DNA from: Octopus sinensis
Lineage: Eukaryota
Assembly: GCF_006345805.1 (NCBI RefSeq)
Contig: NC_043010.1
Coordinates: forward strand, 29,698,001 to 29,762,000
Reading direction: 5' to 3'
DNA length: 64,000 nucleotides
Notes under the pieces: model-generated
What the model was told of the DNA's origin: nothing
The model's input: the letters and a program-made list of their open reading frames with translations, nothing else
The model's database searches: none
Program-made: the position numbers and the translations under genes
Shown: one piece after another, positions 8,751 through 63,470 of the stretch
How the letters are laid out: each line of letters starts with the position of its first letter
Position numbering within the stretch: the stretch's first letter is position 1

Positions 8751-8800
8751 CCGTCCAACCCATGCTAGCAAGGAAAACGAATATTAAACGATGATGATGA
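8751..8800 (+). mobile_element. RTE 3' tail
   Basis: CCGTCCAACCCATGCTAGCAAGGAAAACGAATATTAAACGATGATGATGA, homologous to the tail at 35793-35853. Confidence 0.85.
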
Positions 8801-8869
8801 AGAGGAGGATATATATATATATATGACATATGTACACACAGATATACATATACATGCACATACACACAC

Positions 8870-15035: not shown

Positions 15036-15081
<46 letters not shown>

Positions 15082-15466
15082 CATATATATATACACATCA
15101 TATATGTGTGTATCATATATATATATATTGCATATATTATATATACATACATATATATATATCATATATATCACATATGTATACCTATCATATATATATA
15201 TACATATACATATATATAAATATATCATATATATATACACATATATAAATATATCATATATATATATACATGTATCATATATATATATATCACATATACA
15301 TATAAATGTATATATCATACACATATATATATATGCATATATATATACATGTATCATATATATATATCACATATACATATAAATGTATATATCATACATA
15401 TATATATATATATATACATGTATCATGTATATATCACATATACATATAAATGTATATATCATACAC

Positions 15467-15498
<32 letters not shown>

Positions 15499-15510
15499 CT
15501 GTATATATGA
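15036..15510. repeat. (TA)n/(TACA)/(TATC) compound microsatellite
   Basis: Direct reading; source of the spurious YIYI ORFs. Confidence 0.95.
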
Positions 15511-15610
15511 TATGCGACAATTATTTGGTAACCATGATAAAACTCCGAGAATTGCGACATATTATATTTATAGAATATCGAGGTCTCTTTCATTCTTTTG
15601 TTGTCTTACC

Positions 15611-21586: not shown

Positions 21587-21941
21587 AATATATATATATC
21601 GTATGTAAACATCTTTTATATATATATAATGTATGCATCTATAATACACACATTATAAATATATACACATATATGCATATGCATTAGAATATGTGTGTAT
21701 AGGTGTATATATATATATGCATATATCAATATATGTGTTTGTGTGTATGTGTAAATAGGTAAATAAGACTATCATGACTTTGACATTTGTGCTGAGGTGA
21801 TCATTCTTAAAACAGATATGATAGAAGTGAAAGTTTCTCCCTCCAGCCCTGACCATGTGAAGAATGCTCTACAATCATGAAACTTAGAGTCAAGTAAAAA
21901 TAGTGTTATGATGTATCTACTACATTATAAATAAATTACAA

Positions 21942-22115
21942 TTATTGAGAAGTGTTTGAATTTGGGTTTTCCCTTGCAAAAGATGAATGGTGCTGCTGCT
22001 GCTGTTGTGGTTGCTGCTGGTGATTTTGTTGCTGCAGTTGGTGGTGGTGTTGGTTGTGGTGATGAGCAAGATTATGGTGATGATGATGATGAGATTGTTG
22101 CCATGACAATGGCAA
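21942..22115 (-). pseudogene. Decayed duplicate of the ZF1 His/Gln-tract coding segment
   Basis: QQSHHHHHHNLAHHHNQHHHQ...PQQQQQHHSSFARENPNSNTSQ* versus QQSHHHHHHHHHHRNHGHHHNQHHH...PQQQQQQHHSSSARENPNSNTSH at 22944-23178. Confidence 0.85.
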
Positions 22116-22477: not shown

Positions 22478-24502
22478 TTAGATGACACCAGCCTGCTGGC
22501 TGTTTTGTGACCGATTGTTCTGCTGTTTGCTCTGCCTCACCCCGCATGACAGATTTGATGAGGAGTTTGCCCAGCTCGAGCTCCACCTTGGCGGGACTTG
22601 GAAGCCGCGAGACCAACCATAATTGGATTCCCACGATTCCCAGGTCGAAGACATCCAGGACGAAGACAATGCAAGGGGCTGCAAACGAAGTGCAGCTGAG
22701 CGGGAGTGAGCATGAGATGATGGGCTTGGTGTTGGTGGCGGTGTGGCTGGAACGGATGACATAGAGTTGTGTGAAGTTAATGATGCATTCATAGTTGGTG
22801 TGGAGGAGATGCTTGAGGAGTAAACTGGTACAGTTACTGTAGCAGCTCCAGCAGCAGTAGCAGCAGTGGCAACAGAAGTAGAACTAGACACTACATTAGC
22901 TGCAGTTGACAATGTTGTACTTACACTTGTTGACGAATTAGAATTATGAGAGGTGTTTGAATTCGGGTTTTCCCTAGCAGAAGATGAATGGTGCTGCTGC
23001 TGCTGCTGTTGTGGCTGCTGCTGTTGCTGCTGCTGCTGGTGATGTTGCTGCTGTTGTTGCTGCTGTTGTTGATGCTGTTGGTGATGGTGGTGGTGTTGGT
23101 TGTGGTGATGACCATGATTACGGTGATGGTGGTGGTGGTGATGATGGTGATGCGACTGTTGCCGTGACGATGACATGCTTGTTGTAGATGTGTCCTTTGG
23201 CAGCTGCTCAGGTGGCATTGCTCGACTGACTTCTTCACGAGTGTGAGAGCGCATGTGTTTTTGCATGTTTACCCGTTGAGTAAACCCTTTACTGCATACA
23301 GCACAGCTGAATGGTTTGTCAGCTGTGTGTGTATACTCATGCTTTTTTAGGTTTGCTCTCTGGCTGAATCCACGCTGACATGTGTCACACTTGAACGGCT
23401 TCTCTCCAGAATGAACGAGAAGGTGAATGGTTAAGTTGGCTCGCTGAGTGAAACCCTTTTTGCACACCTCACAGTAAAACAATTTACATTTTGTGTGCGT
23501 GCATGCATGATTGATTAAATGCACTCTCTGCGTGAATTCTTTACTGCAGATATCACATTGGAATCTTTTCAAACCCATGTGCATACATTCATGCTTTTTC
23601 AGGTTTGCACTCTGTGCAAAGGCTTTGTCACATATGGAACACTTGAATGGTTTTTCTCCACAGTGAATTCTTTCATGGTTCTGGAGATGAATCTTTTGAC
23701 TAAACGTTTTGGAGCACACAAAGCAAGAATATGGCTTCTGACCACTATGGACACACTCGTGATTAGTTAAATGCACACGCTGGCTGAATGCTTTCGAACA
23801 AATGCTGCACTGGTAAGGTTTCACTCCACTGTGAATGCGTTCATGGATGATAAGATGGGCTTGCTGGCTGAATGCTTTGCAACAAACAACACAGACATAT
23901 GGTTTTATTCCACTGTGAATCCGTTCATGACAGATGAGGTGTGCCCTCTGGCTGAATGCCTTTCGACAAACATAACACGCATAAGGTTTTATGCCTGTAT
24001 GAATACGTTCATGGTTTTGCAAATGTGCTCTTTGATTAAATGACTTTGAACATATTGCACAAGAGAATGGACGTTCACCAGTGTGAACACGTTCATGGCT
24101 CAGCAGGTGAGCTCGTTGGCTGAACACTTTGCCACAGAAACCACAAGCCAAGTTTTTGAAACTCTCTGTGGCATGGTCCCGTTCATGGTTTCTCAAGTTT
24201 GCTCGTCGTGAGAATGCTTTACGACAGATTTCACACTTAAAGGCTTTGGTGCTTTCTCCAAATCGATGCAGAAATGATTTTCGGTGGTGCGATATCCCAT
24301 AATATGAACTCGAGGTACCAGATGTACTAGCTATACCAGATGTACTAGGTGTGTCAGAAGTACTAACTGTGCCAGAAGTACTAGAGGTTGTGCCAGATGA
24401 TGTAGTTTTCCAGTTGTCTTCTGGTAAAATTGTCCGACTATAATTGTCAGTTGAGGACATTTGTTTACCAACAGAATATGAAGACGCTGGTTCCTGGTAC
24501 AT
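22478..24502 (-). CDS. C2H2 zinc-finger protein ZF1 (674 aa; 12 tandem fingers, polyHis/polyGln, Ser/Thr-rich tail), single coding exon
   Basis: Twelve C-x2-C-x12-H-x3-H units with TGERP/SGEKP-like linkers; uninterrupted ORF; acceptor TGTTATATCAG ending at 24610. Confidence 0.95.
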   Translation of the reverse strand: MYQEPASSYSVGKQMSSTDNYSRTILPEDNWKTTSSGTTSSTSGTVSTSDTPSTSGIASTSGTSSSYYGISHHRKSFLHRFGESTKAFKCEICRKAFSRRANLRNHERDHATESFKNLACGFCGKVFSQRAHLLSHERVHTGERPFSCAICSKSFNQRAHLQNHERIHTGIKPYACYVCRKAFSQRAHLICHERIHSGIKPYVCVVCCKAFSQQAHLIIHERIHSGVKPYQCSICSKAFSQRVHLTNHECVHSGQKPYSCFVCSKTFSQKIHLQNHERIHCGEKPFKCSICDKAFAQSANLKKHECMHMGLKRFQCDICSKEFTQRVHLINHACTHTKCKLFYCEVCKKGFTQRANLTIHLLVHSGEKPFKCDTCQRGFSQRANLKKHEYTHTADKPFSCAVCSKGFTQRVNMQKHMRSHTREEVSRAMPPEQLPKDTSTTSMSSSRQQSHHHHHHHHHHRNHGHHHNQHHHHHQQHQQQQQQQQQHHQQQQQQQQPQQQQQQHHSSSARENPNSNTSHNSNSSTSVSTTLSTAANVVSSSTSVATAATAAGAATVTVPVYSSSISSTPTMNASLTSHNSMSSVPATPPPTPSPSSHAHSRSAALRLQPLALSSSWMSSTWESWESNYGWSRGFQVPPRWSSSWANSSSNLSCGVRQSKQQNNRSQNSQQAGVI

Positions 24503-29960: not shown

Positions 29961-30259
29961 ATTCACACGCATTTTATATTTATAAATAAATATATATATA
30001 CAGCAGTTTATTTTTGTGAACATACGACGAAAACCGTGGAACGACGAGAAAACAAGAACGATAAAGAATATTGTTTCAACAAAAAGAAAAAAATACCATG
30101 ATTACTAACTGATAATCACATTTATAGAAAAAAAACAGCAACAATAAAAACAATGGCTAATGAATTATCGGAAAAGAATATTTACGAAAACAGCATCAAA
30201 TTTGTACGTAAATCCATTCACACACAGTACACACACGTTGTATATATACATACATACAT

Positions 30260-30294
<35 letters not shown>

Positions 30295-30961
30295 ATATAT
30301 AGATAGATACATACATACATACATACATGCATACATAGATGCGCGCGCGAGCACACACACATACAGAGACAGCTGTATTCACATAAATCTATATACAAAC
30401 ATATATACATACATATAACACAAAATGCTAAGAGACAAAACTAAAACCAGAGATAACAAACAAGTAAAAATAAATAAACGAAATAAATAAACGGGCATTC
30501 GTTAAGAAGAAGGGGGAAAAAAACAAGCAACGGTGGGTGTAGCTCTTACTAAGGATGGAAACCAGCAATCTAGTTTTCCATTAGATAAAAACCAGAACTG
30601 TGACAGTCAGACTACATCTAAAAAAAGAAGGCTGAGTGATTGAAGACCATTTAAATGTCTAAGACAAAAACGACCACTACATACCCTGATAGACGTACGA
30701 ACTCAACTGGGTAGATCGGTCTTCTAATGCCTGCCCCCTTGTTCTTTTCTTTACTTATACAGACAGGCTTTTGTCGCAGTTACCATCGTGTCTGCTGTGT
30801 TGATGATGGTGGCTGGTGTTGTTCATGATTATTCTTTAGCTTCCCCTCTCGGAAGTTGTCACCATTGAAATAGCGTACATCGTCTCGGTTTACCGACTAA
30901 GGGAGATAACTGTACGGAAGACTGGTGTTAATGTGTGTGTGTGTGTGTGAATGCACGGATG

Positions 30962-31002
<41 letters not shown>

Positions 31003-31030
31003 GCAAACACACACACATATATGTATGTGT

Positions 31031-31083
<53 letters not shown>

Positions 31084-31304
31084 ATATATATTCTTTTACT
31101 TGTTTCAGTCATGTGACTGCGGCCATGCTGGAGCACCGCCTTTAGTCGAACAAATCGACCCCAAGACTTATTCTTTGTAAGCCTAGTGATTATTGTTTCG
31201 GTTTCTTTTTCCGAACCGCTAAGTTACGGGGACGTAAACACACCAACATCGGTTGTCAAGCGATGGTGCGGGACAAACACAGACACACAGACATACACAC
31301 AATT

Positions 31305-31336
<32 letters not shown>

Positions 31337-32021
31337 TATATATATATATAATATATAGATAGATACATACATACATACATACATGCATACATAGATGCGC
31401 GCGCGAGCACACACACATACAGAGACAGCTGTATTCACATAAATCTATATACAAACATATATACATACATATAACACAAAATGCTAAGAGACAAAACTAA
31501 AACCAGAGATAACAAACAAGTAAAAATAAATAAACGAAATAAATAAACGGGCATTCGTTAAGAAGAAGGGGGAAAAAAACAAGCAACGGTGGGTGTAGCT
31601 CTTACTAAGGATGGAAACCAGCAATCTAGTTTTCCATTAGATAAAAACCAGAACTGTGACAGTCAGACTACATCTAAAAAAAGAAGGCTGAGTGATTGAA
31701 GACCATTTAAATGTCTAAGACAAAAACGACCACTACATACCCTGATAGACGTAACGAACTCAACTGGGTAGATCGGTCTTCTAATGCCTGCCCCCTTGTT
31801 CTTTTCTTTACTTATACAGACAGGCTTTTGTCGCAGTTACCATCGTGTCTGCTGTGTTGATGATGGTGGCTGGTGTTGTTCATGATTATTCTTTAGCTTC
31901 CCCTCTCGGGAAGTTGTCACCATTGAAATAGCGTACATCGTCTCGGTTTACCGACTAAGGGAGATAACTGTACGGAAGACTGGTGTTAATGTGTGTGTGT
32001 GTGTGTGTGAATGCACGGATG

Positions 32022-32060
<39 letters not shown>

Positions 32061-32091
32061 GCAAACACACACACATATATGTATGTGTACA

Positions 32092-32148
<57 letters not shown>

Positions 32149-32359
32149 TTTTACTTGTTTCAGTCATGTGACTGCGGCCATGCTGGAGCACCGCCTTTAG
32201 TCGAACAAATCGACCCCAAGACTTATTCTTTGTAAGCCTAGTGATTATTGTTTCGGTTTCTTTTTCCGAACCGCTAAGTTACGGGGACGTAAACACACCA
32301 ACATCGGTTGTCAAGCGATGGTGCGGGACAAACACAGACACACAGACATACACACAATT

Positions 32360-32400
<41 letters not shown>
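30260..32400. repeat. Near-identical tandem duplication, period 1056 bp
   Basis: ACATAC donor motif at 30684 and 31740; unique sequence identical apart from 1-bp indels (AGACGTACGA/AGACGTAACGA, CTCGGAAG/CTCGGGAAG). Confidence 0.92.
30685..30925 (-). promoter_or_regulatory. Candidate non-coding first exon of ZF1 (second copy about 31741-31985)
   Basis: CAGG|GTATGT donor; CpG-retaining; T-rich minus-strand sequence downstream towards the 24610 acceptor. Confidence 0.4.
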
Positions 32401-32411
<11 letters not shown>

Positions 32412-32561
32412 CGGGCTTCCTTCAGTTTCCGTCTACCAAATCCACTCACTTTGGTCGACCCGAAGCTATAGTAGAAGACACTTGCCCAAGGTGCCACACA
32501 GTGGGACTGAACCTGGAACCATGTGGTTGGGAAGCAAGCTACTTACCACAACCACTCCTGC

Positions 32562-32562
<1 letters not shown>
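32146..32562 (-). mobile_element. SINE family A, full length (tail half duplicated at 31090-31320)
   Basis: Same sequence as 29193-29610. Confidence 0.9.
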
Positions 32563-32592
<30 letters not shown>

Positions 32593-35500
32593 CGTGGGTA
32601 TACTTATCGCTGAGAAATGGGTCGTGGGTATACTTATCACTGAGAAATGGGTAGATAAAGTAATTGAGGTAATCAGAGTATGTGACAGAATACTTAAGAT
32701 TAGATTAGTGCTTCATCATAGTTTAGCAACCATTATATCGGCCTATGCTCCTCAGTCGGGGCTACCCGATGGACAGAAAGACCAATTCTATGACACTCTA
32801 CTGCAGACTACCTCGTTGACGAACAACAGAGACCTTCTCTTTGTGGCTGGTGACTTCAATGGTCACGTTGGACGACATGCTGGGGGCTTCCATGGTGTAC
32901 ATGGAGGCTATGGCTATAGTTCCCGCAACGAGGAGGGAACCAGGCTGCTGGAGTTCTGTGATGCAAATAATCTTATGATTTGCAACACTAAATTCAGGAA
33001 ACCTACCAGCTATCTAGTCACCTACCGATCGGGCCAACATACCAGCCAAATTGACTACATCCTTGCCAGGCAAAGGGAGAGATGGCTGCTTACAAATGCC
33101 AAAACCTTCCCAGGCGAAGAATGTACCCCACAACATAGACTGGTAGTTAGTGACTTTAGGATCAGGACTAGGAGGACAACCAGAAGACGACCAACATGGA
33201 GAAGAAGGATCTGGAAGCTTAAAGATCCTGCGAATGGACAGAGATTTAGGAACATGCTACTTGAAGCCTTTGACGAAGTAGAAGGGGATAGAGTATCACA
33301 TGGAGTAGAAGGCAACTGGACGTTTCTAAGGGACAACCTGCTGAGAGCCACTGACCAGATCTGTGGCTGGTGCAAAGTCCCCTCTCATCCCAAGGTAACG
33401 TGGTGGTGGAACAGTGTTGTAGACAGGGCTATTAGAGAAAAGAGACAGACTTGAAAGGACTGGAAGAATGGTGATAGCAGGGAATTGTATCAGACAGCCA
33501 AAAGGGAAGCTAGGAGACAGGTCTATCTAGCCAGAGGGGAAGCAGATAAGAAAAAATTTGCCAATGTTCTGTGCCGACAGTGTGTGAGAGAGAATTGCGA
33601 TGTGGTAGGAGAGAAGTGTGTTTGCATGGAAGATGGTTCACTTGCGCTAAATGAGGATGTAAAGAGAGAGGTTTGGAGACGCCACTATGAAAGGTTGCTG
33701 AATAAAGAAAATGAATGGGATAAAGAGAGTCTGCCGAATGTTGACCCAACAGAGGGACCAGCTATCCGAGTTGACAGTTCCTTGGTAGTTAAGGCAATTA
33801 GAAGCATGAAGACAGGGAAAGCCCCAGGCCCATCAGGAATCACTGCAGAGATGCTCAAAATATCTGGTAGTGTCGGTTATAGCCTAGTCACACGAATAGT
33901 TAATCAGGTGATACACGAAGGAGTCATACCCAATGACTGGTGTAGCAGCATAATAGTCAACTGCTACAAAGGTAAAGGTGACGCCCTAGATACAAATAAT
34001 TACAGAGGTATCAAGCTGTTGGATCAGGTAATGAAGATTACAGAGAGGGTCATAGCCCAACTAATTAGAGAGAGAGTTAGTTTAGATGAGATGCAGTTTG
34101 GGTTCGTGCCAGGAAAAAGCACCACTGATGCTATATTCCTGGTAAGGCAGCTGCAGGAGAAATACCTAGCCAAAGATAAGCCCCTGTACCTGGCTTTTGT
34201 TGACATGGAGAAAGCCTTCGACAGGATCCACCGATCCCTTATCTGGTGGTCAATGAGGAAACTAAGGATAGATGAATGGTTAGTGAGAGCTGTGCGAGCC
34301 ATGTACAGGGACGCTGCTAGTAAGGTGAGGGTTGGCAACGAGTACAGTGAAGAATTCAAGGTAGAGGTAGGGGTCCACCAAGGATCAGTCCTCAGCCTCC
34401 TCCTATTTATCATAGTCCTCCAGGCAATAATGGAGGAATTCAAGACAGGATGCCCCTGGGAGCTCCTATCTGCTGATGACCTTGCTCTAATTGCTGAGTC
34501 ACTATCAGAACTGGAGGAGAAATTTCAGGTGTGGAAGCAAGGATTAGAATCGGAGGGCCTTAGAGTCAATCTAGCTAAAACCAAAGTCCTAATAAGTAGG
34601 AAGGTAGACAAATCACAAACGCCTTCAGGTAGATGGCCCTGCTCGATCTGTAGAAAAGGTGTAGGTAGAAACTCTATAAGATGCACCAAGTGAAAGCTAT
34701 GGACACATAAGAGGTGCAGCAATGTCAAAGGAAGGCTAACTAGGAAGATAGTTTTTGTATGTGGCAGATGCTCAGGAACAATAAACACTGAAAATGCTCT
34801 GAGACCAACTTCTGTCACTTTCCAGGGAGAAAAACTAGAAATAGTTGATAGCTTCCGTTACCTAGGTGACCAAGTCAGCAGCGGGGGTGGGTGTGCTGAA
34901 AGTGTAACTGCTAGATTAAGAATAGCTTGGGCAAAGTTCAGAGAGCTCTTACCTCTGCTGGTGACAATGGGCCTCTCGCTCAGAGTAAAAGGTAGACTGT
35001 ATGACGCATGTGTACAAACAGCCATGCTACATGGCAGTGAAACATGGGCTGTGACTGCTGAGGACATGCAGAAGCTCACAAAGAATGAAGCCAGTATGCT
35101 CCGATGGATGTGTAACATCAGTGTTCATACTCGACAGAGTGTAAGTACCTTGAGAGAAAAGCTGGACCTAAGAAGCATCAGATGTGGTGTGCAAGAGAGA
35201 CGTTTGCACTGGTATGGACATGTGGCGAGAATGGATGAAGATAGTTGTGTGAAAAAGTTCCACACCCTAGCGGTTGAGGGAACCTGTGGAAGAGGCAGAC
35301 CCAGGAAAACCTGGGACGAGGTGGTGAAGCACGACCTTCGAACTTTAGGTCTCACTGAGGAAATGACTAGAGACCGAGACCTCTGGAAGTATGCTGTGCG
35401 TGAGAAGACCCGGTAGGACAAGTGAGACCATAACCTAAGGCCTTCTACACGGGATGTAGCCAGTTCACTTATGCATACCTTCCCTTCTTGGGACACAAAA

Positions 35501-35853
35501 CTCTACTTGTGAAGACCTGTTGAGGCAAGTGAGAAATCAGAATCGAAATCGATCAATGGAAATTGCAGCTGAGTTACCAGTACCGGTGGCACGTAAGAGA
35601 ACCATCCGAACGTGGCCGTTGCCAGCGCCTCCCCGACTGGCCTCGTGCCGGTGGCACGTAAAAAGCACCATCTGTTCGTGGCCGTTGCCAGCAGTGCCCT
35701 GACTGGCCTCGTGCTGGTGGCACGTAAAAAGCACCATCCGTTCGTGGCCATTGCCAGTATCGCCTGGCCCCGGTGGCACATAAAAAGCACCATCCGTCCA
35801 ACCCATGCTAGCATGGAAAGCGGATGCTAAACGATGATGATGATGATGATGAT
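32593..35853 (+). mobile_element. RTE-clade LINE, 5'-truncated (APE endonuclease + reverse transcriptase), 66-bp repeats in 3' UTR, (GAT)n tail
   Basis: AGDFNGHVG and SQIDYIL (APE); GKAPGPSG, YRGIKLL, FVDMEKAFD, GVHQGSVLS and ADDL (RT); in-frame stops at 33452 and 34691. Confidence 0.97.
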
Positions 35854-35855
35854 GA

Positions 35856-37806
35856 TATCATCATCATCATCGTTTAACGTCCGCTTTCCATGCTAGCATG
35901 GGTTGGACGATTTGACTGAGGACTCGCGAACCAGATGGCTGCACCTGGCTCCAATCTGATCTGGCAGAGTTTCTACAGCTGGATGCCCTTCCTAACGCCA
36001 ACCACTCCGAGAGTGTAGTGGATGCTTTTATGTGCCACTGGCACAAGAGCCAGTCAGGCGGTACTAGCAATGGCCATGCTCAAGTGGTGTTTTTTACGTG
36101 CCACCTGCACAGGAGCCAGTCCAGTGGAACTGGCAACGACCTCGCTCGAAGGTTTTTCATGTGTCACCGGCACAAGTGCTAATGAGGTGATGCTTGTAAT
36201 GATCACGTTTGAATGGTGCTTTTTATGTGCCACCAACACAGAAGCCAGTCAGCTGCTCTGGCAGCGATCATGCTCAGATGGTGCTCTTAGCACTCCACTG
36301 GCATGGGTGCCAGTCATTGAATTTGTGAATTTGATTTGATTTCGATTTCACTTGCCTCAACAGGTCTTCACAAGCAGAGTTTAGTGTCCAATGAAGGAAA
36401 GATACACATAAGTGGACTGGTTACACCCCTGGCATAGGCCAAGGGTTATGGTTTCACTTGGCTTGCTGGGTCTTCTCATGCACTGCAAATTTCCAAAGTT
36501 CTTGGTCACTAGTCATTGCCTCAGTGAGGCCTAATGCTCGAAGGTCGTGATTCACTACCTCATCCCAAGTCTTCCAGGGTCTACCTCTTCCAAAGGTTCC
36601 CGCAACTGCTAGGGTGTGGCACTTTTTCACACAGCTATTCTCATCCATTCTCGCCACTTGGTCATACCAGCGCAGTCGTCTCTCTTGCACACCACATCTG
36701 ATGCTTCTTAGGTCCAGCTTTTCTCTCAAGGTACTTACACTCTGTCGAGTATGGACACTGACATTACACATCCATCGGAGCATACTGGCTTCATTCTTTG
36801 TGAGCTTCTGCATGTCCTCAGCAGTCACAGCCCATGTTTCACTGCCATGTAGCATGGCTGTTTGTACACATGCGTCATACAGTCTACCTTTTACTCTGAG
36901 CGAGAGGCCCATTGTCACCAGCAGAGGTAAGAGCACTCTGAGCTTTGCCCAGGCTACTCTTATTCTAGCAGGTACACTTTCAGTGCACCCTCCCCCGGTA
37001 CTGACTTTCTCACCTAGGTAACGGGAGCTATCAACTATTTCTAGTTTTTTCTCCCTGGAATGTGGTGGAAGTTGTTCTCTGCACATTTTTCAATGTTTAT
37101 TTCTCCTGAGTATCTGCCACATACAAAAACTATATTCCCAGTTAACCTCCCTTTGATATTGCTGCACATTTTATGTGTCCATAGCTTACACTGGGTATAT
37201 CTTATAGAGTTTCTACCTACGCCTTTTCTACAGATTGAGCAGGGCCATCTACCTGAAGAGATTTGTGGTTTGTCTGCCTTCCTACTTATTAGGACTTTGA
37301 TTTTAGCTATGTTGACTCTAAGGCCCTCCGATTCTAATCCTTGTTTCCACACCTGAAACTTCTCCTCTAGTTCTGATAGTGACTCAGCAATTAGAGTAAG
37401 GTTGTCAGTATAGAGGAGCTCCCAGGAGCATCCTGTCTTGAATTCTTCTGTTATTGCCTGGTGGACTATGATAAATAGGAGGGAGCTGAGGACTGAACCT
37501 TGGTGGATCCCCTACCTCTACCCAGAATTCATCACCGTACTCGTTGCCAACCCTCACCTTACTGACAGTGTCCCTGTACATGGCTTGCACAGCTCTCACT
37601 AACCATTCATCTATCCTTAGTTTCCTCATTGACCACCAGATAAGGGATCAGGGGACCCTGTCAAAGGCTTTCTCCATCTCAACAAAAGACAGGTACAGAG
37701 GTTTATCTTTGGCTTGGTATTTCTCCTGCAGCTGTCTTACCAGAAATATAGCATCAGTGGTGCTTTTTCCTGGCATGAACCCAAACTGCATCTCATCTAA
37801 ACTGAC
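35856..37806 (-). mobile_element. RTE-clade LINE of the same family, older and more truncated, opposite orientation
   Basis: ORF 36454-37086 parallels 34961-35416; homology to RTE1 runs back to about 34078; frameshifts present. Confidence 0.95.
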
Positions 37807-40496: not shown

Positions 40497-40546
<50 letters not shown>

Positions 40547-40637
40547 TATATATAATATATATATATATATATATTATATATATGTGCTACATATATATAT
40601 ATATATATATATATAGGCTATATATATATAATGTGCT

Positions 40638-40675
<38 letters not shown>

Positions 40676-40693
40676 TATATATATATATGTGCT

Positions 40694-40737
<44 letters not shown>

Positions 40738-40758
40738 TATATATATATATATATATGC

Positions 40759-40836
<78 letters not shown>

Positions 40837-40848
40837 ATATATATAATA

Positions 40849-40923
<75 letters not shown>

Positions 40924-40982
40924 TGTGGTGTGCTTACATATATTATATATATTAATATATATATATATATATATATGATATG

Positions 40983-41016
<34 letters not shown>

Positions 41017-41069
41017 AATAATATATATGTGCATATTTATATATGCTTACATATATACATACATACTAC

Positions 41070-41105
<36 letters not shown>
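40497..41105. repeat. ~600 bp (TA)n array punctuated by GTGCTTACAT units
   Basis: Direct reading. Confidence 0.95.
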
Positions 41106-44409: not shown

Positions 44410-44930
44410 CTAAACTCTGCTTGTGAAGACCTGTTGGGGCAAGTGAAATCGGAATCGAAATTGAACCAATCCTATGACTGGCACCCGACAGTTGCCAGTG
44501 CTGCTGGACTGACTCCCATGCAGGTGGCAAGTAAAGAAACACCGTTTCGATCCTGTGCTTGAGGAGACCTATTGAGTCAAGTACATCAACATCAAAAATC
44601 AATGGAAATTGTATTTGTGATCCCTGTGCCGGTGACACATAAAAAGCACCATCTGAACATGGCCGAAGCCAGCGCTGCCTTGACTGGCATCCGTGCCGGT
44701 GGCACGTAAAATGCACCAATCCGATCGTGGCTGTTGCCGGCCTCGCCTGGCACATAAAAAGCACCCACTACACTCACGGAGTGGTGGGCGTTAGGAAGGG
44801 CATCCAGCTGTAGAAACACTGCCAGATCAGACTGGGGCCTGGTGCAGCCCCCTGGCTTCCCAGATCCCAGTCGAACTGTCCAACCCATGCTAGCATGGAA
44901 AACGGATGTTAAACGATGATAATGATGATG
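44410..44930 (+). mobile_element. RTE 3' UTR and tail fragment
   Basis: Homologous to 35500-35853 and 35856-36400. Confidence 0.85.
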
Positions 44931-45774
44931 AATACATCTCTCAAATAACATGGGAAGGTTGCATAGGTGTTTGATCAGGGACAACATGGCACTAAACAAC
45001 AATCCTGCTGCTGCAACTTCTCCACCTACAACTACTAGTACCACCACCAGTGCTATTACTATTACTACAACATTCAGTACAATTGAAAAACAAGTACAAA
45101 ACACAAACGTTATAAACAATCCTTTTTTTTTTATTCAAGGAAAATAATAATAATAATAATAATAATGATAATAATAATAATAATTATAAAAAAGATGAAA
45201 ATAATTCAACAATTCTGAGTTTATAGTTTTAACAATGAGAAATATTAAACTTCCATTTATATATGTTGCATTGTGTAAGTTTGTTTCGAGGTGTTTTAGC
45301 CACTGAGACTAAGGCCATGCTGGATTACTACTGTCATATATATTTGTGTGTGTGTGTGTGTGTGTGTGTGTATACACACCTCAAAAGTAAATAGACATCC
45401 CTCATCATACCATGTGGACTTTAGCTAGTGCCTCTACTAAATACTAGACTAAGTGTTTAAATGCATAACTGATATTTTGTTTCTAGAAATAAATCTTTCA
45501 AAAATGATGGTGTCTATTTACTTTTGAAACATGTGTGTATGAGAATGAATGTATGTTATATATATATATATATATCTTATACTTTTAGAAGAGGGGTGAG
45601 AGTGACTTTAAAGTTTTAGCCTGCTAGTCTTTGTCAGACTGTCTTGTAAAAATATGATGTGTATGTAAAAGTATTAATTCTTTAATTTAATGTTCTATAT
45701 ATATATACACACACATACATATGTATATGTACATATATATCATATATATATGTCATACATGTAATATATGTATG

Positions 45775-50234: not shown

Positions 50235-50911
50235 GTTATAGCTAAAATAATAATTACATTGAGCATTTTTATGTACGTACACACACATACATATAAATAC
50301 ATATACATACATACTTTAATTCAAGTATACATATGTATATGAAGTATATATATGTTTAAGTGTATGCATAATTGTGTGAGTGTACTTTCCAAACATTGTA
50401 CAAAAGCCTTTGACTGAATCTACACCTTTAAAGGTAAGAAAAAAACTCATCAGAAAGGCAGTTTACTTGTGATTTTCATGGAAAATAGCAGATATTAGTG
50501 ATAGAGGGGGACTGTTATATCCTTTGTCTAATAGTTTGTGTATAACTGAGTGTGATGCTACACCTAAGGGGACTGGGGTAAACAGAATATAAACTACTAT
50601 GCTTTAATTTATTAACCTTAGTATCATGTAGTTCAGCACAGGTGTGTCAAGACTGTCTGTATAGAATGAACAGGAGAACAAACAGTCTGTCGAGAAGAGA
50701 GGAAGAGAAAGTAGGAGAAATGAAGATTGTAAATGGGAAAAAATGGAAGATGTGAGTAAAGAAATATGAGAAAGAAAGAGAGAGAGAGAAAGAAAGAAAC
50801 AGGCAAACTGGCATGTATGTGTAATTTGTATATATGTGTATATATGTGTGTGTGTGTGTGCATGTGTGTGTATATGTATGTGTGTATATATATATATGTA
50901 TGTATGTATGC

Positions 50912-50973
<62 letters not shown>

Positions 50974-51487
50974 ATATATATACATATTTATATATATAGA
51001 AATAGAGGGTGGAGCAAGGGAGAGAGAGAGAGAGAGAGACAGCGAGAGAAGGGGAGATTTACTAGAGGAAAATATCATGTTGCAAGAATTGAGAGAATAA
51101 TAAAAGAAGAAAGAGGGAGGTAGAGATGAGAGAAAATATCTATAGATGTATGAAAACACAAAAATGCCAGCTAGAAAGAGTGAGAGAAATTGTGTATGTG
51201 TGTGTTTGTTTGAAATGAAAAATGAGAGAATGTGTCAGATTAAGAAAGAGAGAGAAAAGAAAATATACATGAACAAAAGAAAGAGATAGAGAATAGCAAT
51301 AAGAAAGTTTGTAAGAGCAAAAAAGAGAGAGAAAGAGAGAGAGAGTGAAAAGGTGAAGAAATGCAACTCATTTATAGTAATGGACGGCAAGCAGTTTGTA
51401 AAGCATCAGATATCAATCACTCTCTCTCTCTTTCTTTCTCTCTAGCTCTCTATTGCTCCCTTTCTCTTTTCCTTGATACACAACAAT

Positions 51488-52843
51488 TCAGTCACTGGGC
51501 TGAGTATGAGAGGAGGTTGTTTGTCCTTGGGTGCTGGAGTCAGTAATCTTTGGGTTCATATTTGACTGGTTTGACATGCCAAGCCCTGCTGCAGGGAACA
51601 TTTGCAGAGCATGATAAATATGTGTGGTGTTACCTGGCACTTGAATAGAAGGGAAAATCTGAGCAATTGGATACATTGGTGTAGCAGCATTCTGAAATAT
51701 CTGACCACTTCCAGAGACTGCAGTTGCATTAAGAGGCTGTGATGTACCAGCAATGTTGAGTGTGTGAAGGACTTTTACTTGTTCATCATGTTGTTCATGA
51801 TGATGATGATGGTGGTGGTGGTGATGCTGATGATGATGATCATGCTGTTCCTTTTGAAATGTCTGGTTATCATCACTGCTTTCACCGTCCTTCTGCGGAA
51901 CGCAGCTCAGCTTTCGTTCCCCCTTGTTTGGTCGATTATGTCTGATAAGGTGATCATTGCGTGCAAATGCATAGCCACAGATCTTACATTTGAATGGTCT
52001 CTCACCAGTATGAATTCTCTTATGAATCTTTAGGTGGTCCTTCCTTGAAAGCGCTTTGCTACAGATGTCGCAACTGAACATCTTATCTGGTTGATGGCTG
52101 GTCATGTGGCGTATCAGGTGGTCGTTGCGTGCAAACGCATAGCCACAGGTTAGACATCGATACGGTCGCTCACCAGAGTGGATTCTCTGATGCACTTTAA
52201 GGTGGTCTCTACGAGATAGTGCTTTATTGCAGATATCGCAGGTAAATAGTTTCTGGTTGCTGTGAATACGTATATGGCGCACAAGATGGTCATTTCTGGC
52301 AAATGCAAAACCACATGTGGGGCATTTAAAAGGACGTTCTCCAGTGTGGATGCGTTTGTGCACTTTCAAGTGGTCACGTCGAGTTAAAGTCTTGTTGCAT
52401 ATGTCACAGCTATAAAGTTTCTCTGGTGTAATAGCTGCTTGTGTTATTGTTGTTGCAGTTGGTGTGGTGATGGAGGTGGTGGTGGTGTTGGTGGTATTTA
52501 CATGAGAATGGCAATGATGGTGATTGTGATTGTGCTGCTGGTGATGATGATGGTGGTGATGGTGTAGGTGAGGTTGATGAGACTGATGGATGTGAAGGCC
52601 TGCATGACTGTTGGAAATGTTTGTGACGGCTTTTCCATCAACATTAGACAGGGTAGCAGAGGTTGAAACATTAGTTGTGAGAGGAATAGGGTTTGATGGT
52701 GTGACAAAAGGACCACTTCCCCACACATCATAGGGTGTGCTCTTCTCAACAGAAGAACCAGAAGTTACTGTGAAGCTGGAAGTGGCCTTGTTCTCAATAG
52801 TTTTAGAAGAGGACTCAACATCGGTATTAGCCATTGAATTCAT
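51488..52843 (-). CDS. C2H2 zinc-finger protein ZF2 (451 aa from the first ATG; 5 intact fingers plus 1 lacking the last His; two polyHis tracts)
   Basis: (RRDHLKV finger + RNDHLxR finger) x3; acceptor TTTATTTTAATTCAG ends at 52846, 2 nt before the ATG at 52843, so the TTG start in the ORF track (52864) is probably intronic. Confidence 0.93.
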   Translation of the reverse strand: MNSMANTDVESSSKTIENKATSSFTVTSGSSVEKSTPYDVWGSGPFVTPSNPIPLTTNVSTSATLSNVDGKAVTNISNSHAGLHIHQSHQPHLHHHHHHHHQQHNHNHHHCHSHVNTTNTTTTSITTPTATTITQAAITPEKLYSCDICNKTLTRRDHLKVHKRIHTGERPFKCPTCGFAFARNDHLVRHIRIHSNQKLFTCDICNKALSRRDHLKVHQRIHSGERPYRCLTCGYAFARNDHLIRHMTSHQPDKMFSCDICSKALSRKDHLKIHKRIHTGERPFKCKICGYAFARNDHLIRHNRPNKGERKLSCVPQKDGESSDDNQTFQKEQHDHHHQHHHHHHHHHHEQHDEQVKVLHTLNIAGTSQPLNATAVSGSGQIFQNAATPMYPIAQIFPSIQVPGNTTHIYHALQMFPAAGLGMSNQSNMNPKITDSSTQGQTTSSHTQPSD

Positions 52844-54534
52844 GTCTGAATTAAAATAAAGCAAAATGGTTTAAAATGTCATTATTAAGATTTAGTCAGT
52901 CACAATTAGATACTACATGATACCAAATACCACTACGCTGGACAGCAGATTGACTTGGTTAAAACATCAACATAATCCTCATCGCTGTTATAATCATCTT
53001 CACCGTCAAAATCTTATCTTTCTTGTTTCCATTTATTTTGAATTAAGTACTTGCGTCCAATGGTTTTTTTTCCTCTTTGGTAACAGCGAATCTAAAATAA
53101 ACTCTTTGACTTACAAATATGAACTTATGTCATGAAAACAGATAAGCATTGTGTTCATATCACATCAACAGCAACAAGAGTAACAACAATTAAAAAAATA
53201 TATAAATATAACTATATATATGTATATGTGTGTGTGTGTGTATATATATAGAGAGAGAGGGAGAGAGAGAGAAAATAGATACATATATAGATAGACAGAC
53301 AGAGAGAGATATTAAAAAGAATCTTAAAAATAGTACGCAAATTAGTAGCTGCAGTACTCTTGAAGCTACCAGATTTGATGTGTATATAAACAAATTCGCT
53401 ACTTGTTTCCCTGTGATTGGTCAAATGATGTAGACACCTCTGAGGAGACCCCAATAAGGGCCAAAAATTGATTAAGGTTGTCCATTATTTTTTTCAATTT
53501 ACAAAGAAACAGGTAAATTTGTCATGTTTACAGATGTGTATGTAAATACAGATTACATAAAAAAAAGTAAGGATGGGAAAGATGGCAACCTCATGTTTGA
53601 TGTTGAAAATGTAATGAAAACTTTCAAAGTTACCAAGTGGAAATGGAGTTGTACCTCTAACGATATTTTGTGGTGTGATTGTTGTTTATGTTACAGTATT
53701 TGTGCAGTTTATATTTTTAGAAAGGACACAAGGAAATGACAGTTGTATTGGTGACTAGAATATAGGGAAAGAAGCAAACCACAAAATAATAATAATAATA
53801 AAAAGAAAATAATTACTAAATTAGTTTATCATTCTAATTATTGCAATTAACAAGTATTTTAAAAAACCCTACTTTTAAAACTGCCTATCCCGGTGTATTT
53901 TGCCACTTTTGTATGTGTTGTAATGATTATTTTCATTGTTATCATCGATGTTATTAGTTAATTAATGCTTCATAACGTTTCTAATAACTTTATGATACTG
54001 TGGAATAATATGAATAACTGAAAATGTAGCTCCCTCAGAATGTGATGTAACAATTACAAAAGATTAAACAAAATGAATAAACTGAAATGACAAGTTAGAG
54101 AGAAGTTGACAAAGCTGGTGGGGGTCAAAACATGCCACCTTAGAGGATCCATTGTGGAAAACCAAAAACAAAAAAAAAATGAAGAAAAGGGCCAGAAAAT
54201 GTTTCAAATTCTCAGGTTCTAAATCAACTTCAAGGTGTTCTGAAAATTGCAGAGATGGAAATATTCAGTTGAAGGTGACTGGTACCATGGTGAACCACAG
54301 ACAGGAGCATAGATGGAGCCATTTGGAGATGTGGAACTCCTATAGAGAAGAAATTTAAAAAAAAAAGCATCAGTTAGAGAGCTGACATCACTATCACAAA
54401 TTCAAAAATATATTTTTGTGATATTTTATGCTGCTGCATACCTCGATTAGAAGAATTTAAGGTGTAACTTGTGAGCTTCATACTCTCCTAATTTACACAG
54501 TCAAACACACACACACATCTTTTTTGGCTTTTTT

Positions 54535-61556: not shown

Positions 61557-62581
61557 CTTGTGTGGAATAAAACAACTTTGTTTCATAGAATAGGTATCAG
61601 AATTTAAAAAAAAAATAAAGTACTGGGTTAATTTAAAGACACTGACATAGCTTGGCTGCAATCCAATGACTGAAATAAGTAAAAGAATACAAGAGTAAAA
61701 GACAGTTACTTGTGATTGGCAGCTGTAATTGATGTACACTGGATTAAGCTTAAAATAACAGAACAGCTCCCAGACATCAGTTGTGAGACATTGATGATTC
61801 TACTACATGATATAGCTTTAAGCTGTCATGTTGATTATCTAGGTTTTGCTTATTTCATGGGTGTTCTGACTGACTTGAAACAGTTTATAGGTGAGAGGGA
61901 AGCTACACTGTTGGCAGAAAGTGAAAGAGAAAGGAAGAGGAAGGATACATTGTAGACAAAGAGAGAGAGAGACAGGTGGGGAGAGAAAGAAAGTGAGTGA
62001 AAGAATAGGTGCTAAATATTTACTTTTCCTATGCATTGATACACGTAGTCACTTGATATTCAATGATCAAAGATCAAAGGTAGCTTACCTGGGAGTGACT
62101 GCATTATTTAGATGCATGATATAATGTTTCTTATTGGTGAGGTTTTAAAACTTACATATTGCAGAGATCTCTACACTACTTGATAATATGAAGGTTACAT
62201 GCACATGTGCATGCTCTCTCTTTCTCTCTCACACATACACACACGCCATCATCACCACTACTGCCGCCATCATCATCATCTTCATCATCATCATCATCAT
62301 CAACAACATTATTATCATCATCATCATTTTGTGTCTGCTTTTCAATGGTGGCATAAGTCACATGCAACTCACTAAGATCCAGCTACAAACAGCAACAGAA
62401 GCAATTGGCCAGCTTAGTTGTGTTTCTTACAATGCAGACTGGTTATATTTTATTAATCACTTAACACTAGAGAGGATGTCTGAGGCTATACTAAAAACTC
62501 AGTCATGCCATATAACCATTCCAATTCACATTCATTTCTCTGCTAAATGAAAAGAGACTACATCTTGTTTATAAAAGCCTT

Positions 62582-62999: not shown

Positions 63000-63016
63000 A
63001 AAGCCTTTGATATATT

Positions 63017-63470
63017 GTCATCATCATCACCATTTAACATCTGTTTTCCATGCAGTCATGAGCTGGACTGTTTGACATAAGTTGGTTAGTCAGAGGACTG
63101 TTCCAAGTTCCTGTGTCTGCTTTGGTATAGTTTCTACTGCTGGATGCCCTTCCTGATGCCAGTCACTTTACTGAGTTTACTGGGTGCTTTTTTTATGTAG
63201 TAATGGTATTAGTGAAGCCACCAAATAACTTGCAAGACAAGACTCATCAACTGACGTGGGTGAGGAGTATTGTGTTGGGGGTTCAGCTTTATATCAGGTG
63301 ACGAGAGGTTAAAGTGTGATAGACGGATAGGAACAGGTGTCTTGCTATTGGGGAGATACATGGTTACTCCAGTTAGAAAAGAGAGAAGATGGTGAAGATG
63401 TATCAGTGCTGCATGCCCTCAAATTACAGTAAGGTGAATGTAAGAGAAGTGGTACGGAGAATTGAACAGG
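63017..63470 (-). mobile_element. RTE-type 3' UTR/tail fragment
   Basis: CATCATCATCACCATTTAACATC tail; homologous to 520-1072. Confidence 0.7.

What the first reader, a model, noticed from the sequence alone, without database searches (positions are those of the whole stretch)
23240..24250. ZF1 finger code predicts a mixed (NGA/NAA)n site like the local retroelement tails
Seen: 11 of 12 fingers have Gln at -1 and His or Asn at +3 (QRAH, QRVH, QRAN, QSAN...), and none has Arg at +6. Established (Zif268-type code): Q-1 reads a 3' A, H3 a middle G, N3 a middle A (the QRAHLER module binds GGA). Inference: the site is 5'-(NAA)3-NGA-NAA-(NGA)6-NAG, i.e. TAA/TGA triplet microsatellite. RTE/SINE tails here are exactly such mixtures (CGA TGA TAA TGA TGA TGA at 44914; (GAT)n at 35832; TAA/TGA run at about 45144-45185). 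ZF1 has no KRAB or SCAN domain but has a His/Gln low-complexity region, so it could be a KRAB-independent reader of retroelement tails or microsatellites. This is a hypothesis only.
Basis: inference. Interest (0 to 1): 0.7.

Follow-up and report, generated by a model that had tools for sequence, protein, structure and literature searches.

The report
Octopus twelve-finger protein, uniform reading residues
An intact octopus gene encodes a 12-finger DNA-binding protein whose base-reading residues are nearly the same in every finger, so it probably reads a three-base-periodic DNA sequence; the proposed link to TGA/TAA retroelement tails fits two of every three bases but is not shown.

Summary
ZF1 (window 22478-24502, minus strand, 674 aa; Octopus sinensis) has 12 C2H2 fingers. 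Eleven carry Gln at -1, seven His and five Asn at +3, and none Arg at +6. This uniformity exceeds that of 117 generic poly-zinc-finger proteins. It is confined to the base-contact positions, and the fingers are only 39-76% identical in DNA, so recent duplication does not explain it.

ZF1 belongs to a small unnamed family with conserved N- and C-terminal motifs. Four relatives were found. They have Gln -1, Asn +3 and Asn +6, so the His +3 block (F2-F7, F9) appears peculiar to ZF1.

The 5' T does not follow from it: in published module tables Asn +6 goes with 5' A and only Ser +6 (F2) with T; from general knowledge Lys +6 goes with G. The coded site is therefore purine-rich.

The retroelement tails are real. 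The only two perfect window matches to nAA(nGA)6 are SINE 3' ends, so the idea is compatible but untested. The contact residues are not hypervariable, and no KRAB or SCAN domain was found by Pfam; both argue against a typical transposon-chasing finger gene.

Verdict: an ordinary kind of gene with an unusual, testable signature.

The parts
22478..24502 (-). ZF1 coding sequence: one uninterrupted ORF of 674 aa, ending in a stop codon
   Evidence: An in-frame stop lies 9 codons upstream of the ATG. The start MYQEP aligns with MYP(F/Y/V) at the start of four relatives.
24461..24502 (-). Conserved N-terminal motif MYQEPASSYSVGKQ (family consensus MYP.Q..YS..KQ)
   Evidence: Alignments. M1, Y2, P5, Y9 and Q14 are invariant in 5 sequences.
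24305..24406 (-). Ser/Thr-rich tract encoded by an 18-bp tandem repeat; absent from the relatives
23243..24235 (-). Array of 12 C2H2 fingers, from the first Cys of F1 to the last His of F12. F1 24173-24235, F2 24083-24145, F3 23999-24061, F4 23915-23977, F5 23831-23893, F6 23747-23809, F7 23663-23725, F8 23579-23641, F9 23495-23557, F10 23411-23473, F11 23327-23389, F12 23243-23305.
23579..24151 (-). Block F2-F8, joined by canonical (T/S/C)G.(K/R)P linkers. Predicted core, 5' to 3': nAA (F8) followed by (nGA)6 (F7 to F2). With the +6 code it reads GAA AGA AGA nGA nGA AGA tGA.
   Evidence: Linkers are listed. F1-F2 is long (ATESFKNLA). F8-F9 (MGLKRFQ) and F9-F10 (TKCKLFY) are degenerate. That this block acts as the core is an inference.
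22988..23161 (-). His/Gln low-complexity tract (aa 448-505), an insertion relative to the four relatives
22577..22690 (-). Conserved C-terminal motif LRLQ..LSS..W..SWESNYGWSRGFQVPPRW
   Evidence: W624, Y628, F634 and V636 are invariant in 5 sequences.
35830..35856 (+). SINE-type 3' end AACGA(TGA)n followed by (GAT)8. Perfect match to AANGA(NGA)5. A candidate site by compatibility only.
8787..8806 (+). SINE 3' end AACGATGATGATGAAGAGGA. Perfect match to AANGA(NGA)5. Compatibility only.
44912..44931 (+). SINE 3' end AACGATGATAATGATGATGA. One mismatch to the degenerate core.

Best explanation
ZF1 is an intact, single-coding-exon Octopus sinensis gene for a Krueppel-type tandem C2H2 zinc-finger protein.

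It is the octopus member of a small, so far unnamed family. The family is defined by an N-terminal MYP..Y...Q motif, 10-13 fingers that nearly all carry Gln at -1, and a C-terminal SWE.NY.WSRGFPV motif.

It most likely binds double-stranded DNA in the standard way, about three bases per finger, with the N-terminal finger at the 3' end of the site. The seven fingers with canonical linkers (F2-F8) are taken as the core.

Because the contact residues are almost the same in every finger, the preferred site should be a triplet-periodic, low-complexity strand: nAA followed by six nGA, then nAA-type triplets for F10-F12.

The 5' base of each triplet is poorly determined. The +6 residues (Asn, Lys) lean towards A or G, which gives a polypurine GAA/AGA-like strand.

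The relatives carry Asn at +3 and are predicted to read A-rich sites. ZF1 differs by His at +3 in F2-F7 and F9, a change of AAY to CAY in each finger. This moves the predicted middle base from A to G.

The octopus-specific His/Gln tract would act as a low-complexity effector or localisation region.

Shown: gene anatomy, finger residues, their statistics, and family membership. Inferred: DNA binding, the site, which fingers engage, and the role of the His/Gln tract.
For: - Intact ORF with all 12 fingers keeping their zinc ligands. Pfam zf-C2H2 155.7 bits and zf-H2C2_2 172.8 bits.
- Canonical linkers F2-F8 and H-X3-H spacing.
- The closest solved structures are DNA-bound arrays: ZFP568, Aart, PRDM9, CTCF.
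- The uniformity is restricted to contact positions (entropy 0.41 and 0.98 bit, against generic means of 2.19 and 2.45). Positions +1 and +5 vary normally, and the fingers are only 39-76% identical in DNA. Conservation of the contacts, not recent duplication, explains the pattern.
- The same Gln -1 signature is seen in relatives P0004 (10/10), P0085 and P0194 (8/10) and P0259 (11/13), which share the terminal motifs.
- Module tables give QRAHLER = GGA, QLAHLRA = AGA, QRANLRA = AAA, RKDNLKN = AAG, QAGHLAS = TGA.
- Engineered six-finger arrays do bind GGAA microsatellites genome-wide, and they activate them when fused to a low-complexity domain (PMC9374162).
Against: - No binding data exist.
- Code-based motifs for long natural arrays are often wrong. 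Only 11 of 236 (5%) predicted human KZNF motifs matched ChIP-exo motifs (Wells 2023).
[quoted passage not shown] From my memory of its design (AGA, ACC and AGG triplets), the 5' bases deviate from the module code.
- Long arrays seldom use all their fingers.
- The window holds no good full-length site. The best hit is 20 of 47 bits in my crude matrix, although that exceeds Markov-1 simulations (mean 12, maximum 17).
- No perfect (GAA)n of 4 or more units occurs in the window.
- The purine version of the core has only one hit, with 3 mismatches.
Confidence: 0.55

Rival explanations
1. ZF1 reads the TGA/TAA triplet tails of the local RTE-like LINE and SINE copies, and acts as a KRAB-independent reader or regulator of retroelement 3' ends or of TGA microsatellites.
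For: - Two of every three bases fit.
- The conserved SINE end TTAAACGA(TGA)n sets a register, AAA CGA (TGA)n, that satisfies all 14 positions read by -1 and +3 of F8-F2. The only two perfect window matches to AANGA(NGA)5 are SINE ends, and the one-mismatch match at 44912 is another SINE end. There are 25 matches at up to 2 mismatches against 0.37 expected.
- The TGA/ATC class is the commonest trinucleotide microsatellite in the window, with 10 loci. Several of these are SINE tails.
- F2 (QRAHLLS) resembles the TGA module QAGHLAS.
- Octopus ZNF motifs as a class are predicted to be enriched in transposon consensus sequences.
- The His +3 block is seen only in ZF1 among the five family members.
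Against: - The +6 residues point to 5' A (Asn in 5 fingers) or G (Lys in 3 fingers; own knowledge), not T.
- The enrichment mostly reflects the mere presence of TGA microsatellites. Any nGA-periodic pattern would find them.
- The tails span 2-8 triplets and only one copy reaches 6 or more.
- The family and its Gln -1 signature are shared by four relatives that are only 35-45% identical to ZF1 overall.
- The contact residues are the least variable positions, the opposite of transposon-targeting arrays.
- No KRAB or SCAN domain was found by Pfam; other repressor domains such as FiNZ were not tested.
Confidence: 0.12
2. ZF1 is a sequence-specific factor, but only a few fingers set a short, non-periodic motif that the simple code does not predict. 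The uniform Gln -1 then mainly gives generic affinity, or serves another constraint.
For: - Code predictions succeed rarely for natural long arrays (5%).
- Degenerate linkers at F1-F2, F8-F9 and F9-F10 split the array.
- Bind-n-Seq on Aart recovered only 10-11 bp of an 18-bp site.
Against: Low variability confined to -1, +3 and, in the relatives, +6, across fingers whose other positions have diverged, is hard to explain unless these residues act in the same way in most fingers.
Confidence: 0.25
3. The fingers mainly bind RNA or proteins rather than DNA.
For: Pfam lists zf-C2H2_jaz and zf-met for the whole protein. Some poly-finger proteins bind RNA (general knowledge).
Against: Those Pfam hits have no individually significant stretch. 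They overlap ordinary C2H2 hits. The spacing is H-X3-H with 7-residue TGEKP-type linkers, the DNA-binding type.
Confidence: 0.05
4. ZF1 is a decaying or non-functional copy.
For: It carries octopus-specific coding microsatellites. A partial copy of its tail lies about 1 kb away. The search tools returned no protein record with this exact sequence.
Against: The 2025-nt ORF is open in a 36% G+C genome. All 48 zinc ligands are kept and both terminal motifs are conserved.
Confidence: 0.03

Closest known systems
Unnamed poly-zinc-finger family represented by P0259, P0004 (11-member cluster), P0085 and P0194. These are public proteins without names, and their source organisms were not identified.
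   Same: N-terminal MYP..Y...Q motif. C-terminal SWE.NY.WSRGFPV motif. 10-13 tandem fingers. Gln at -1 in 80-100% of fingers. Similar length (656-791 aa). P0085 is a single ORF on genomic DNA.
   Different: The relatives carry Asn +3, usually Thr +2, and Asn +6, which predicts A-rich triplets. ZF1 has His +3 in F2-F7 and F9, Ala/Val/Ile at +2, Lys +6 in three fingers, and 12 fingers where P0004, P0085 and P0194 have 10 and P0259 has 13. It also has His/Gln and Ser/Thr coding repeats that the relatives lack.
Expanded cephalopod C2H2 genes (Albertin 2015; Holzinger 2025, PMC12513265) and the metazoan ZNF-transposon model (Wells 2023, PMC10547256)
   Same: An octopus poly-finger gene without KRAB or SCAN. 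The idea that such genes read repeats is already published at the family level. Their binding sites in repeats are called an open next step.
   Different: ZF1 has divergent relatives with conserved termini and conserved contact residues. Membership of an octopus-specific expansion clade was not tested. In the window it does not sit in a cluster of paralogues; the only other finger gene, at 51488-52864, is unrelated in its helix types.
KRAB-ZNF and FiNZ-ZNF transposon repressors of vertebrates
   Same: Long tandem C2H2 arrays proposed to recognise retroelement sequences.
   Different: No KRAB or SCAN domain. Contact positions are the least variable rather than the most variable. The fingers are old and diverged.
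Engineered modular fingers (Barbas modules), the six-finger protein Aart (PDB 2I13), and GGAA-microsatellite-targeted arrays fused to EWS (PMC9374162)
   Same: The same helix types: QRAHLxx, QxAHLxx, QRANLxx, R..NL.N. They have measured triplets GGA, AGA, AAA and AAG. Arrays of near-identical helices bind purine-rich microsatellites and activate them through a low-complexity domain. Aart is the fourth-best solved match.
   Different: These are synthetic proteins on a fixed scaffold. The +6 residues of ZF1 (N, K, I, C, S) are mostly not those of the validated modules. ZF1 has 12 fingers with three non-canonical linkers.
ZFP568 (PDB 5V3M, 5WJQ, 5V3J)
   Same: Best solved-structure match (2.1e-75): an 11-finger natural array bound to DNA.
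   Different: A mouse KRAB protein with heterogeneous helices. From my own knowledge, it departs from the three-bases-per-finger rule on A-rich DNA, which is a caution for ZF1.

Membership tests
Krueppel-type tandem C2H2 zinc-finger proteins | Repeated C-X2-4-C-X12-H-X3-5-H units with a conserved hydrophobic core | tested here: met
   12 units at 23243-24235 (-). Pfam PF00096 at 155.7 bits against a cut-off of 25.2.
Krueppel-type tandem C2H2 zinc-finger proteins | TGEKP-type seven-residue linkers between fingers | tested here: met
   8 of 11 linkers are of the type (T/S/C)(G/A).(K/R)P. The exceptions are F1-F2, F8-F9 and F9-F10. PF13465 (zf-H2C2_2) scores 172.8 bits.
KRAB-, SCAN- or other effector-domain ZNFs | An N-terminal KRAB (PF01352) or SCAN (PF02023) domain | tested here: not met
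   Pfam finds only finger families at E <= 0.01. The ORF starts at a conserved MYP motif with a stop 9 codons upstream. FiNZ was not tested.
Unnamed MYP / WSRGFPV poly-finger family (P0259, P0004, P0085, P0194) | Conserved N-terminal and C-terminal motifs flanking the array | tested here: met
   Invariant M1, Y2, P5, Y9, Q14 and W624, Y628, F634, V636 in the 5-sequence alignment.
Unnamed MYP / WSRGFPV poly-finger family (P0259, P0004, P0085, P0194) | Gln at -1 in nearly all fingers | tested here: met
   ZF1 11/12, P0004 10/10, P0085 8/10, P0194 8/10, P0259 11/13.
Unnamed MYP / WSRGFPV poly-finger family (P0259, P0004, P0085, P0194) | Asn at +3 and Asn at +6 in most fingers | tested here: not met
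   ZF1 has Asn +3 in 5 of 12 fingers (His in 7) and Asn +6 in 5 of 12. P0004, P0085 and P0194 have Asn +6 in 9 of 10, and P0259 in 7 of 13. ZF1 is a divergent member.
Transposon-targeting zinc-finger genes (functional class) | Base-contacting residues are the most variable positions, or are under positive selection | tested here: not met
   In ZF1, -1 and +3 are among the least variable helix positions, and in P0004, P0085 and P0194 so is +6. Wells 2023 reports the opposite for such families.
Transposon-targeting zinc-finger genes (functional class) | The predicted motif matches a transposon sequence better than background | tested here: inconclusive
   The degenerate two-base core matches SINE 3' ends perfectly at 8787 and 35830. 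The version with coded 5' bases does not. My matrix is crude.
Transposon-targeting zinc-finger genes (functional class) | Demonstrated binding to, or repression of, the element | not testable with these tools
   No binding or expression data are available here.
Octopus- or coleoid-specific C2H2 expansion clades (Holzinger 2025) | Placement within an expansion clade in a cephalopod C2H2 phylogeny; tandem clusters of close paralogues | tested here: inconclusive
   No close paralogue lies in the 64-kb window; the only other finger gene has RRDH/RNDH helices. No octopus proteins were retrievable, since the tail searches found nothing. No phylogeny was made.

The most novel reading that the evidence does not exclude
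An old family of 'homopolymer-like' finger arrays (Gln -1, Asn +3, Asn +6, predicted to read A-rich triplets) was retuned in the octopus lineage. The same Asn-to-His change occurred at +3 in seven fingers, so the array now reads nGA triplet repeats. Its natural targets would then be the AAACGA(TGA)n ends of the massively amplified octopus SINE/LINE family. The newly acquired His/Gln low-complexity tract would turn those tails into regulatory elements. This would be a natural counterpart of the engineered EWS-finger fusions that activate GGAA microsatellites.
Probability: 0.1. Interest if true: 0.7.

Novelty: new member of a known kind. Interest (0 to 1): 0.33.

Why it matters
Cephalopod genomes hold well over a thousand C2H2 genes and very many SINEs. 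Which repeats, if any, these proteins read is explicitly stated as an open question (Holzinger 2025).

ZF1 is a convenient test case for three reasons:
- Its contact residues are so uniform that the prediction is simple: a triplet-periodic nGA/nAA strand.
- The rival targets, (TGA)n tails against (GAA)n-type polypurine, differ at one base per triplet.
- Relatives with Asn instead of His at +3 provide a natural specificity-swap control.

If the tail reading were true, it would show a KRAB-independent link between a finger protein and retroelement 3' ends in an invertebrate. If it is false, ZF1 remains an ordinary transcription factor with an unusual low-complexity code.

Tried and rejected
1. 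Orthologue survey.
- The search with the finger region returned 7919 generic ZNF hits. Only P0004 and P0085 proved informative.
- Two searches with the non-finger C-terminus found nothing, not even the known relatives (alignment A2; 171 aa of ZF1). Octopod orthologues could therefore not be surveyed.
- The exhaustive profile search was swamped by giant poly-finger proteins. Only P0194 and P0259 were recovered, by parsing the 150 listed hits.
- The source organisms of the relatives could not be identified. BLAST of their loci against the window gave only finger and simple-repeat matches.

2. Exact-sequence cluster look-up. ZF1 is not in the protein collection.

3. A home-made recognition-code matrix. 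Its weights are my own and arbitrary. It only shows that no near-full 36-bp site exists in the window, and that the ranking of TGA tails against GA-rich tracts flips with the assumption made for +6. I do not treat it as evidence for either target.

4. Recent internal duplication or gene conversion as the cause of the uniform helices. Rejected: finger DNA identity is 39-67%, with only F4/F5 at 76%, and non-contact helix positions are variable.

5. A literature search for a natural A-tract-reading finger protein (ZNF384) gave nothing citable. The analogy stays a memory-based lead and is not used.

6. Whether the LINE at 32.3-34.7 kb is of the RTE clade, and whether it shares its 3' end with the SINE, was not resolved. 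Pfam shows only an endonuclease and a reverse transcriptase.
Full report
WHAT IS THERE

The window is part of Octopus sinensis chromosome CM016872.1 (assembly GCA_006345805.1, about 29.72 Mb). The assembly was returned and its species is given in a paper read.

The finding lies inside one long ORF on the minus strand, 22478..24502, of 674 aa. An in-frame stop lies nine codons upstream of its ATG.

From N to C terminus the protein has:
- a short conserved N-terminal motif (24461-24502);
- a Ser/Thr-rich tract encoded by an 18-bp repeat (24305-24406);
- twelve C2H2 fingers (23243-24235);
- a His/Gln tract of 58 residues (22988-23161);
- a Ser/Thr/Ala-rich stretch;
- a conserved C-terminal motif (22577-22690).

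Pfam finds only C2H2 families. There is no KRAB, SCAN or other domain.

CHECK OF THE OBSERVATION

The helices, positions -1 to +6, are RRANLRN, QRAHLLS, QRAHLQN, QRAHLIC, QQAHLII, QRVHLTN, QKIHLQN, QSANLKK, QRVHLIN, QRANLTI, QRANLKK and QRVNMQK.

Gln is at -1 in 11 of 12 fingers. Position +3 is His in 7 and Asn in 5. No finger has Arg at +6.

The pattern exceeds what generic finger proteins show:
- In 118 poly-ZNFs (1475 fingers) returned by the homology search, Gln at -1 is the commonest residue but reaches only 35.5%. The highest per-protein fraction is 71%. The binomial P for 11 or more of 12 is 9e-5.
- 'No Arg at +6' is unremarkable (P = 0.15).
- Within-protein entropy in ZF1 is 0.41 bit at -1 and 0.98 bit at +3. 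The generic means are 2.19 and 2.45 bit and the generic minima 0.89 and 1.19 bit. The non-contact positions +1 and +5 are about as variable as in the generic set.
- The fingers are only 39-67% identical in DNA. Only F4/F5 reach 76%.

The uniformity is therefore specific to the contact positions and old. It is not a by-product of recent finger duplication.

RELATIVES

Two hits of the first search, P0004 and P0085, align with ZF1 end to end. Two more, P0194 and P0259, were picked out of the exhaustive profile search.

- All share the start MYP..Y...Q and the C-terminal SWE.NY.WSRGFPV motif.
- They have 10-13 fingers, with Gln at -1 in 80-100% of them.
- Three of them (P0004, P0085, P0194) have Asn at +6 in 9 of 10 fingers. 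All four have mostly Asn at +3.
- P0085 lies as a single ORF on a genomic contig.
- Their organisms could not be identified.

ZF1 is thus a divergent member of a small, unnamed family:
- The Gln -1 signature is inherited.
- The His +3 block (F2-F7, F9; CAY codons where the relatives have Asn) appears peculiar to ZF1.
- The His/Gln and Ser/Thr tracts are insertions absent from all four relatives.

FROM RESIDUES TO A SITE

- QRAHLER = GGA
- QLAHLRA = AGA
- QRANLRA = AAA

The further step, 'i.e. TAA/TGA', does not follow:
- In the same tables Asn at +6 goes with a 5' A (RKDNLKN = AAG, RSDHLTN = AGG, HRTTLTN = AGT).
- Ser at +6 goes with T (QAGHLAS = TGA).
- Lys at +6 is generally associated with G (my own knowledge).

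The coded site is GAA GAA nAA AGA GAA AGA AGA nGA nGA AGA tGA AAG, a polypurine strand. Only F2 codes for T.

The 5' base is also the weakest part of such codes. [quoted passage not shown] As I recall, it was designed for AGA, ACC and AGG triplets.

For natural long arrays, only 11 of 236 predicted human motifs matched ChIP-exo motifs (Wells 2023).

So nGA and nAA are reasonable predictions, and the identity of n is open.

WHICH FINGERS

The linkers between F2 and F8 are canonical: TGERP, TGIKP, SGIKP, SGVKP, SGQKP, CGEKP. F1-F2 is long. F8-F9 (MGLKRF) and F9-F10 (TKCKLF) are degenerate.

I therefore take F8-F2 as the likely core, nAA(nGA)6. This is an inference.

THE RETROELEMENT TAILS

The quoted sequences exist.

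A search for the SINE 3' core (CCATGCTAGCATGGAAA, which contains a palindrome) finds nine copies. Seven end in TTAAA(C/T)GA followed by 2-8 TGA units, sometimes with a TAA. One more diverged copy was seen at 63015-63034.

An endonuclease ORF and a reverse-transcriptase ORF (32318-34693, +) precede the tail at 35.8 kb. Their clade was not tested.

The TGA/ATC class is the commonest trinucleotide microsatellite in the window, with 10 loci. There is no (GAA)n of 4 or more units.

The degenerate core AANGA(NGA)5 gives these results:
- Two perfect matches, both SINE 3' ends (8787, 35830).
- A one-mismatch match at the SINE end at 44912.
- 25 matches at up to two mismatches, against 0.37 expected from shuffles.

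Most of that excess simply reflects the presence of TGA microsatellites.

The purine version with coded 5' bases has a single three-mismatch hit.

In my crude matrix the best full-length hit reaches 20 of 47 bits. The rank of the TGA tail moves from 8th to 2nd when +6 is made uninformative.

The hypothesis is thus compatible with the sequence, but the sequence cannot decide it.

MECHANISM AND RIVALS

Best-supported reading (0.55): ZF1 is a DNA-binding factor of a conserved family whose near-identical contact residues make it read a triplet-periodic, low-complexity strand. The core is nAA(nGA)6 and the 5' bases lean to purine. The His/Gln tract acts as a low-complexity effector.

The engineered precedent is direct. 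Six-finger arrays aimed at GGAA repeats bind hundreds of microsatellites, and they activate them when fused to a prion-like domain.

The arguments against it:
- the +6 residues;
- the short tails;
- the conserved family;
- no KRAB or SCAN domain found by Pfam;
- contact positions that are the least rather than the most variable, unlike transposon-targeting families.

The other rivals:
- A short non-periodic motif set by a few fingers: 0.25.
- RNA or protein binding: 0.05. The jaz and zf-met Pfam hits have no significant stretch of their own.
- A decaying copy: 0.03.

COMPARISON AND NOVELTY

By kind, this is a Krueppel-type tandem C2H2 protein, and all defining features tested were met.

It is not a KRAB or SCAN protein. 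It fails one hallmark of transposon-chasing arrays, namely hypervariable contact residues.

The general idea that octopus finger genes read repeats is already published (Wells 2023). The actual sites are described as an open next step (Holzinger 2025).

Two things are new here:
- the specific family, defined by its conserved termini and near-homogeneous contact residues;
- the block change from Asn to His at +3 in ZF1.

I rate it a new member of a known kind, of modest interest, and with a cheap, clear experimental test.

LIMITS

- No octopod orthologues could be retrieved.
- The organisms of the relatives are unknown.
- No validated motif predictor or binding data were available.
- The PWM weights are my own.

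Noticed in passing
window 51488-52864 (-); fingers 52010-52408: A second zinc-finger gene (458-aa ORF). It has five to six fingers that alternate between RRDHLKV-type and RNDHLVR-type helices, which is Arg -1 / His +3 and so predicts a G-rich site. GA-rich purine tracts lie next to it at 50692-51443.
   Followed up: partly
window ~21934-22082: A partial copy of about 190 bp (about 83% identity) of the His/Gln-coding part of ZF1 lies roughly 1 kb downstream of the gene. In one frame it reads ...QQHHSSFARENPNSNTSQ. It looks like a fragmentary local duplication.
   Followed up: partly
window 32318-35871: A non-LTR retrotransposon with an endonuclease ORF (32318-33454) and a reverse-transcriptase ORF (33485-34693), split into separate ORFs. 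It is followed by a 66-bp tandem repeat (35583-35764) and a SINE-type 3' end. Two such 3' ends abut tail to tail, (GAT)8 at 35833-35856 and (ATC)5 at 35857-35871, and form a long inverted repeat.
   Followed up: partly
window 1036, 8760, 20128, 35803, 35885, 44885, 47209, 48366, 54861, 63015: At least ten copies of one SINE 3' end, whose core contains the palindrome CCATGCTAGCATGG. Most carry (TGA)2-8 tails. One carries (TA)n instead (48366) and one has no tail (47209).
   Followed up: partly
window ~30200-32410: Tandem-repeat rows and identical purine tracts recur at an offset of about 1056 bp (30468/31524, 30504/31560, 30968/32028, 31273/32328). This suggests a tandem duplication of about 1.06 kb just upstream of the LINE.
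   Followed up: no
window 62268-62327 and 40498-41105, 15036-15513: A (CAT)20 microsatellite, possibly the tail of a diverged SINE copy on the minus strand, and very long (TA)n arrays of up to about 600 bp.
   Followed up: no
P0004, P0085, P0194, P0259 (loci L002, L003): The relatives of ZF1 have almost homogeneous Gln -1 / Asn +3 / Asn +6 fingers, for example QRTNLRN and QVTNLRN. By the simple code these would read runs of AAA triplets. No name or organism is attached to any of them.
   Followed up: partly
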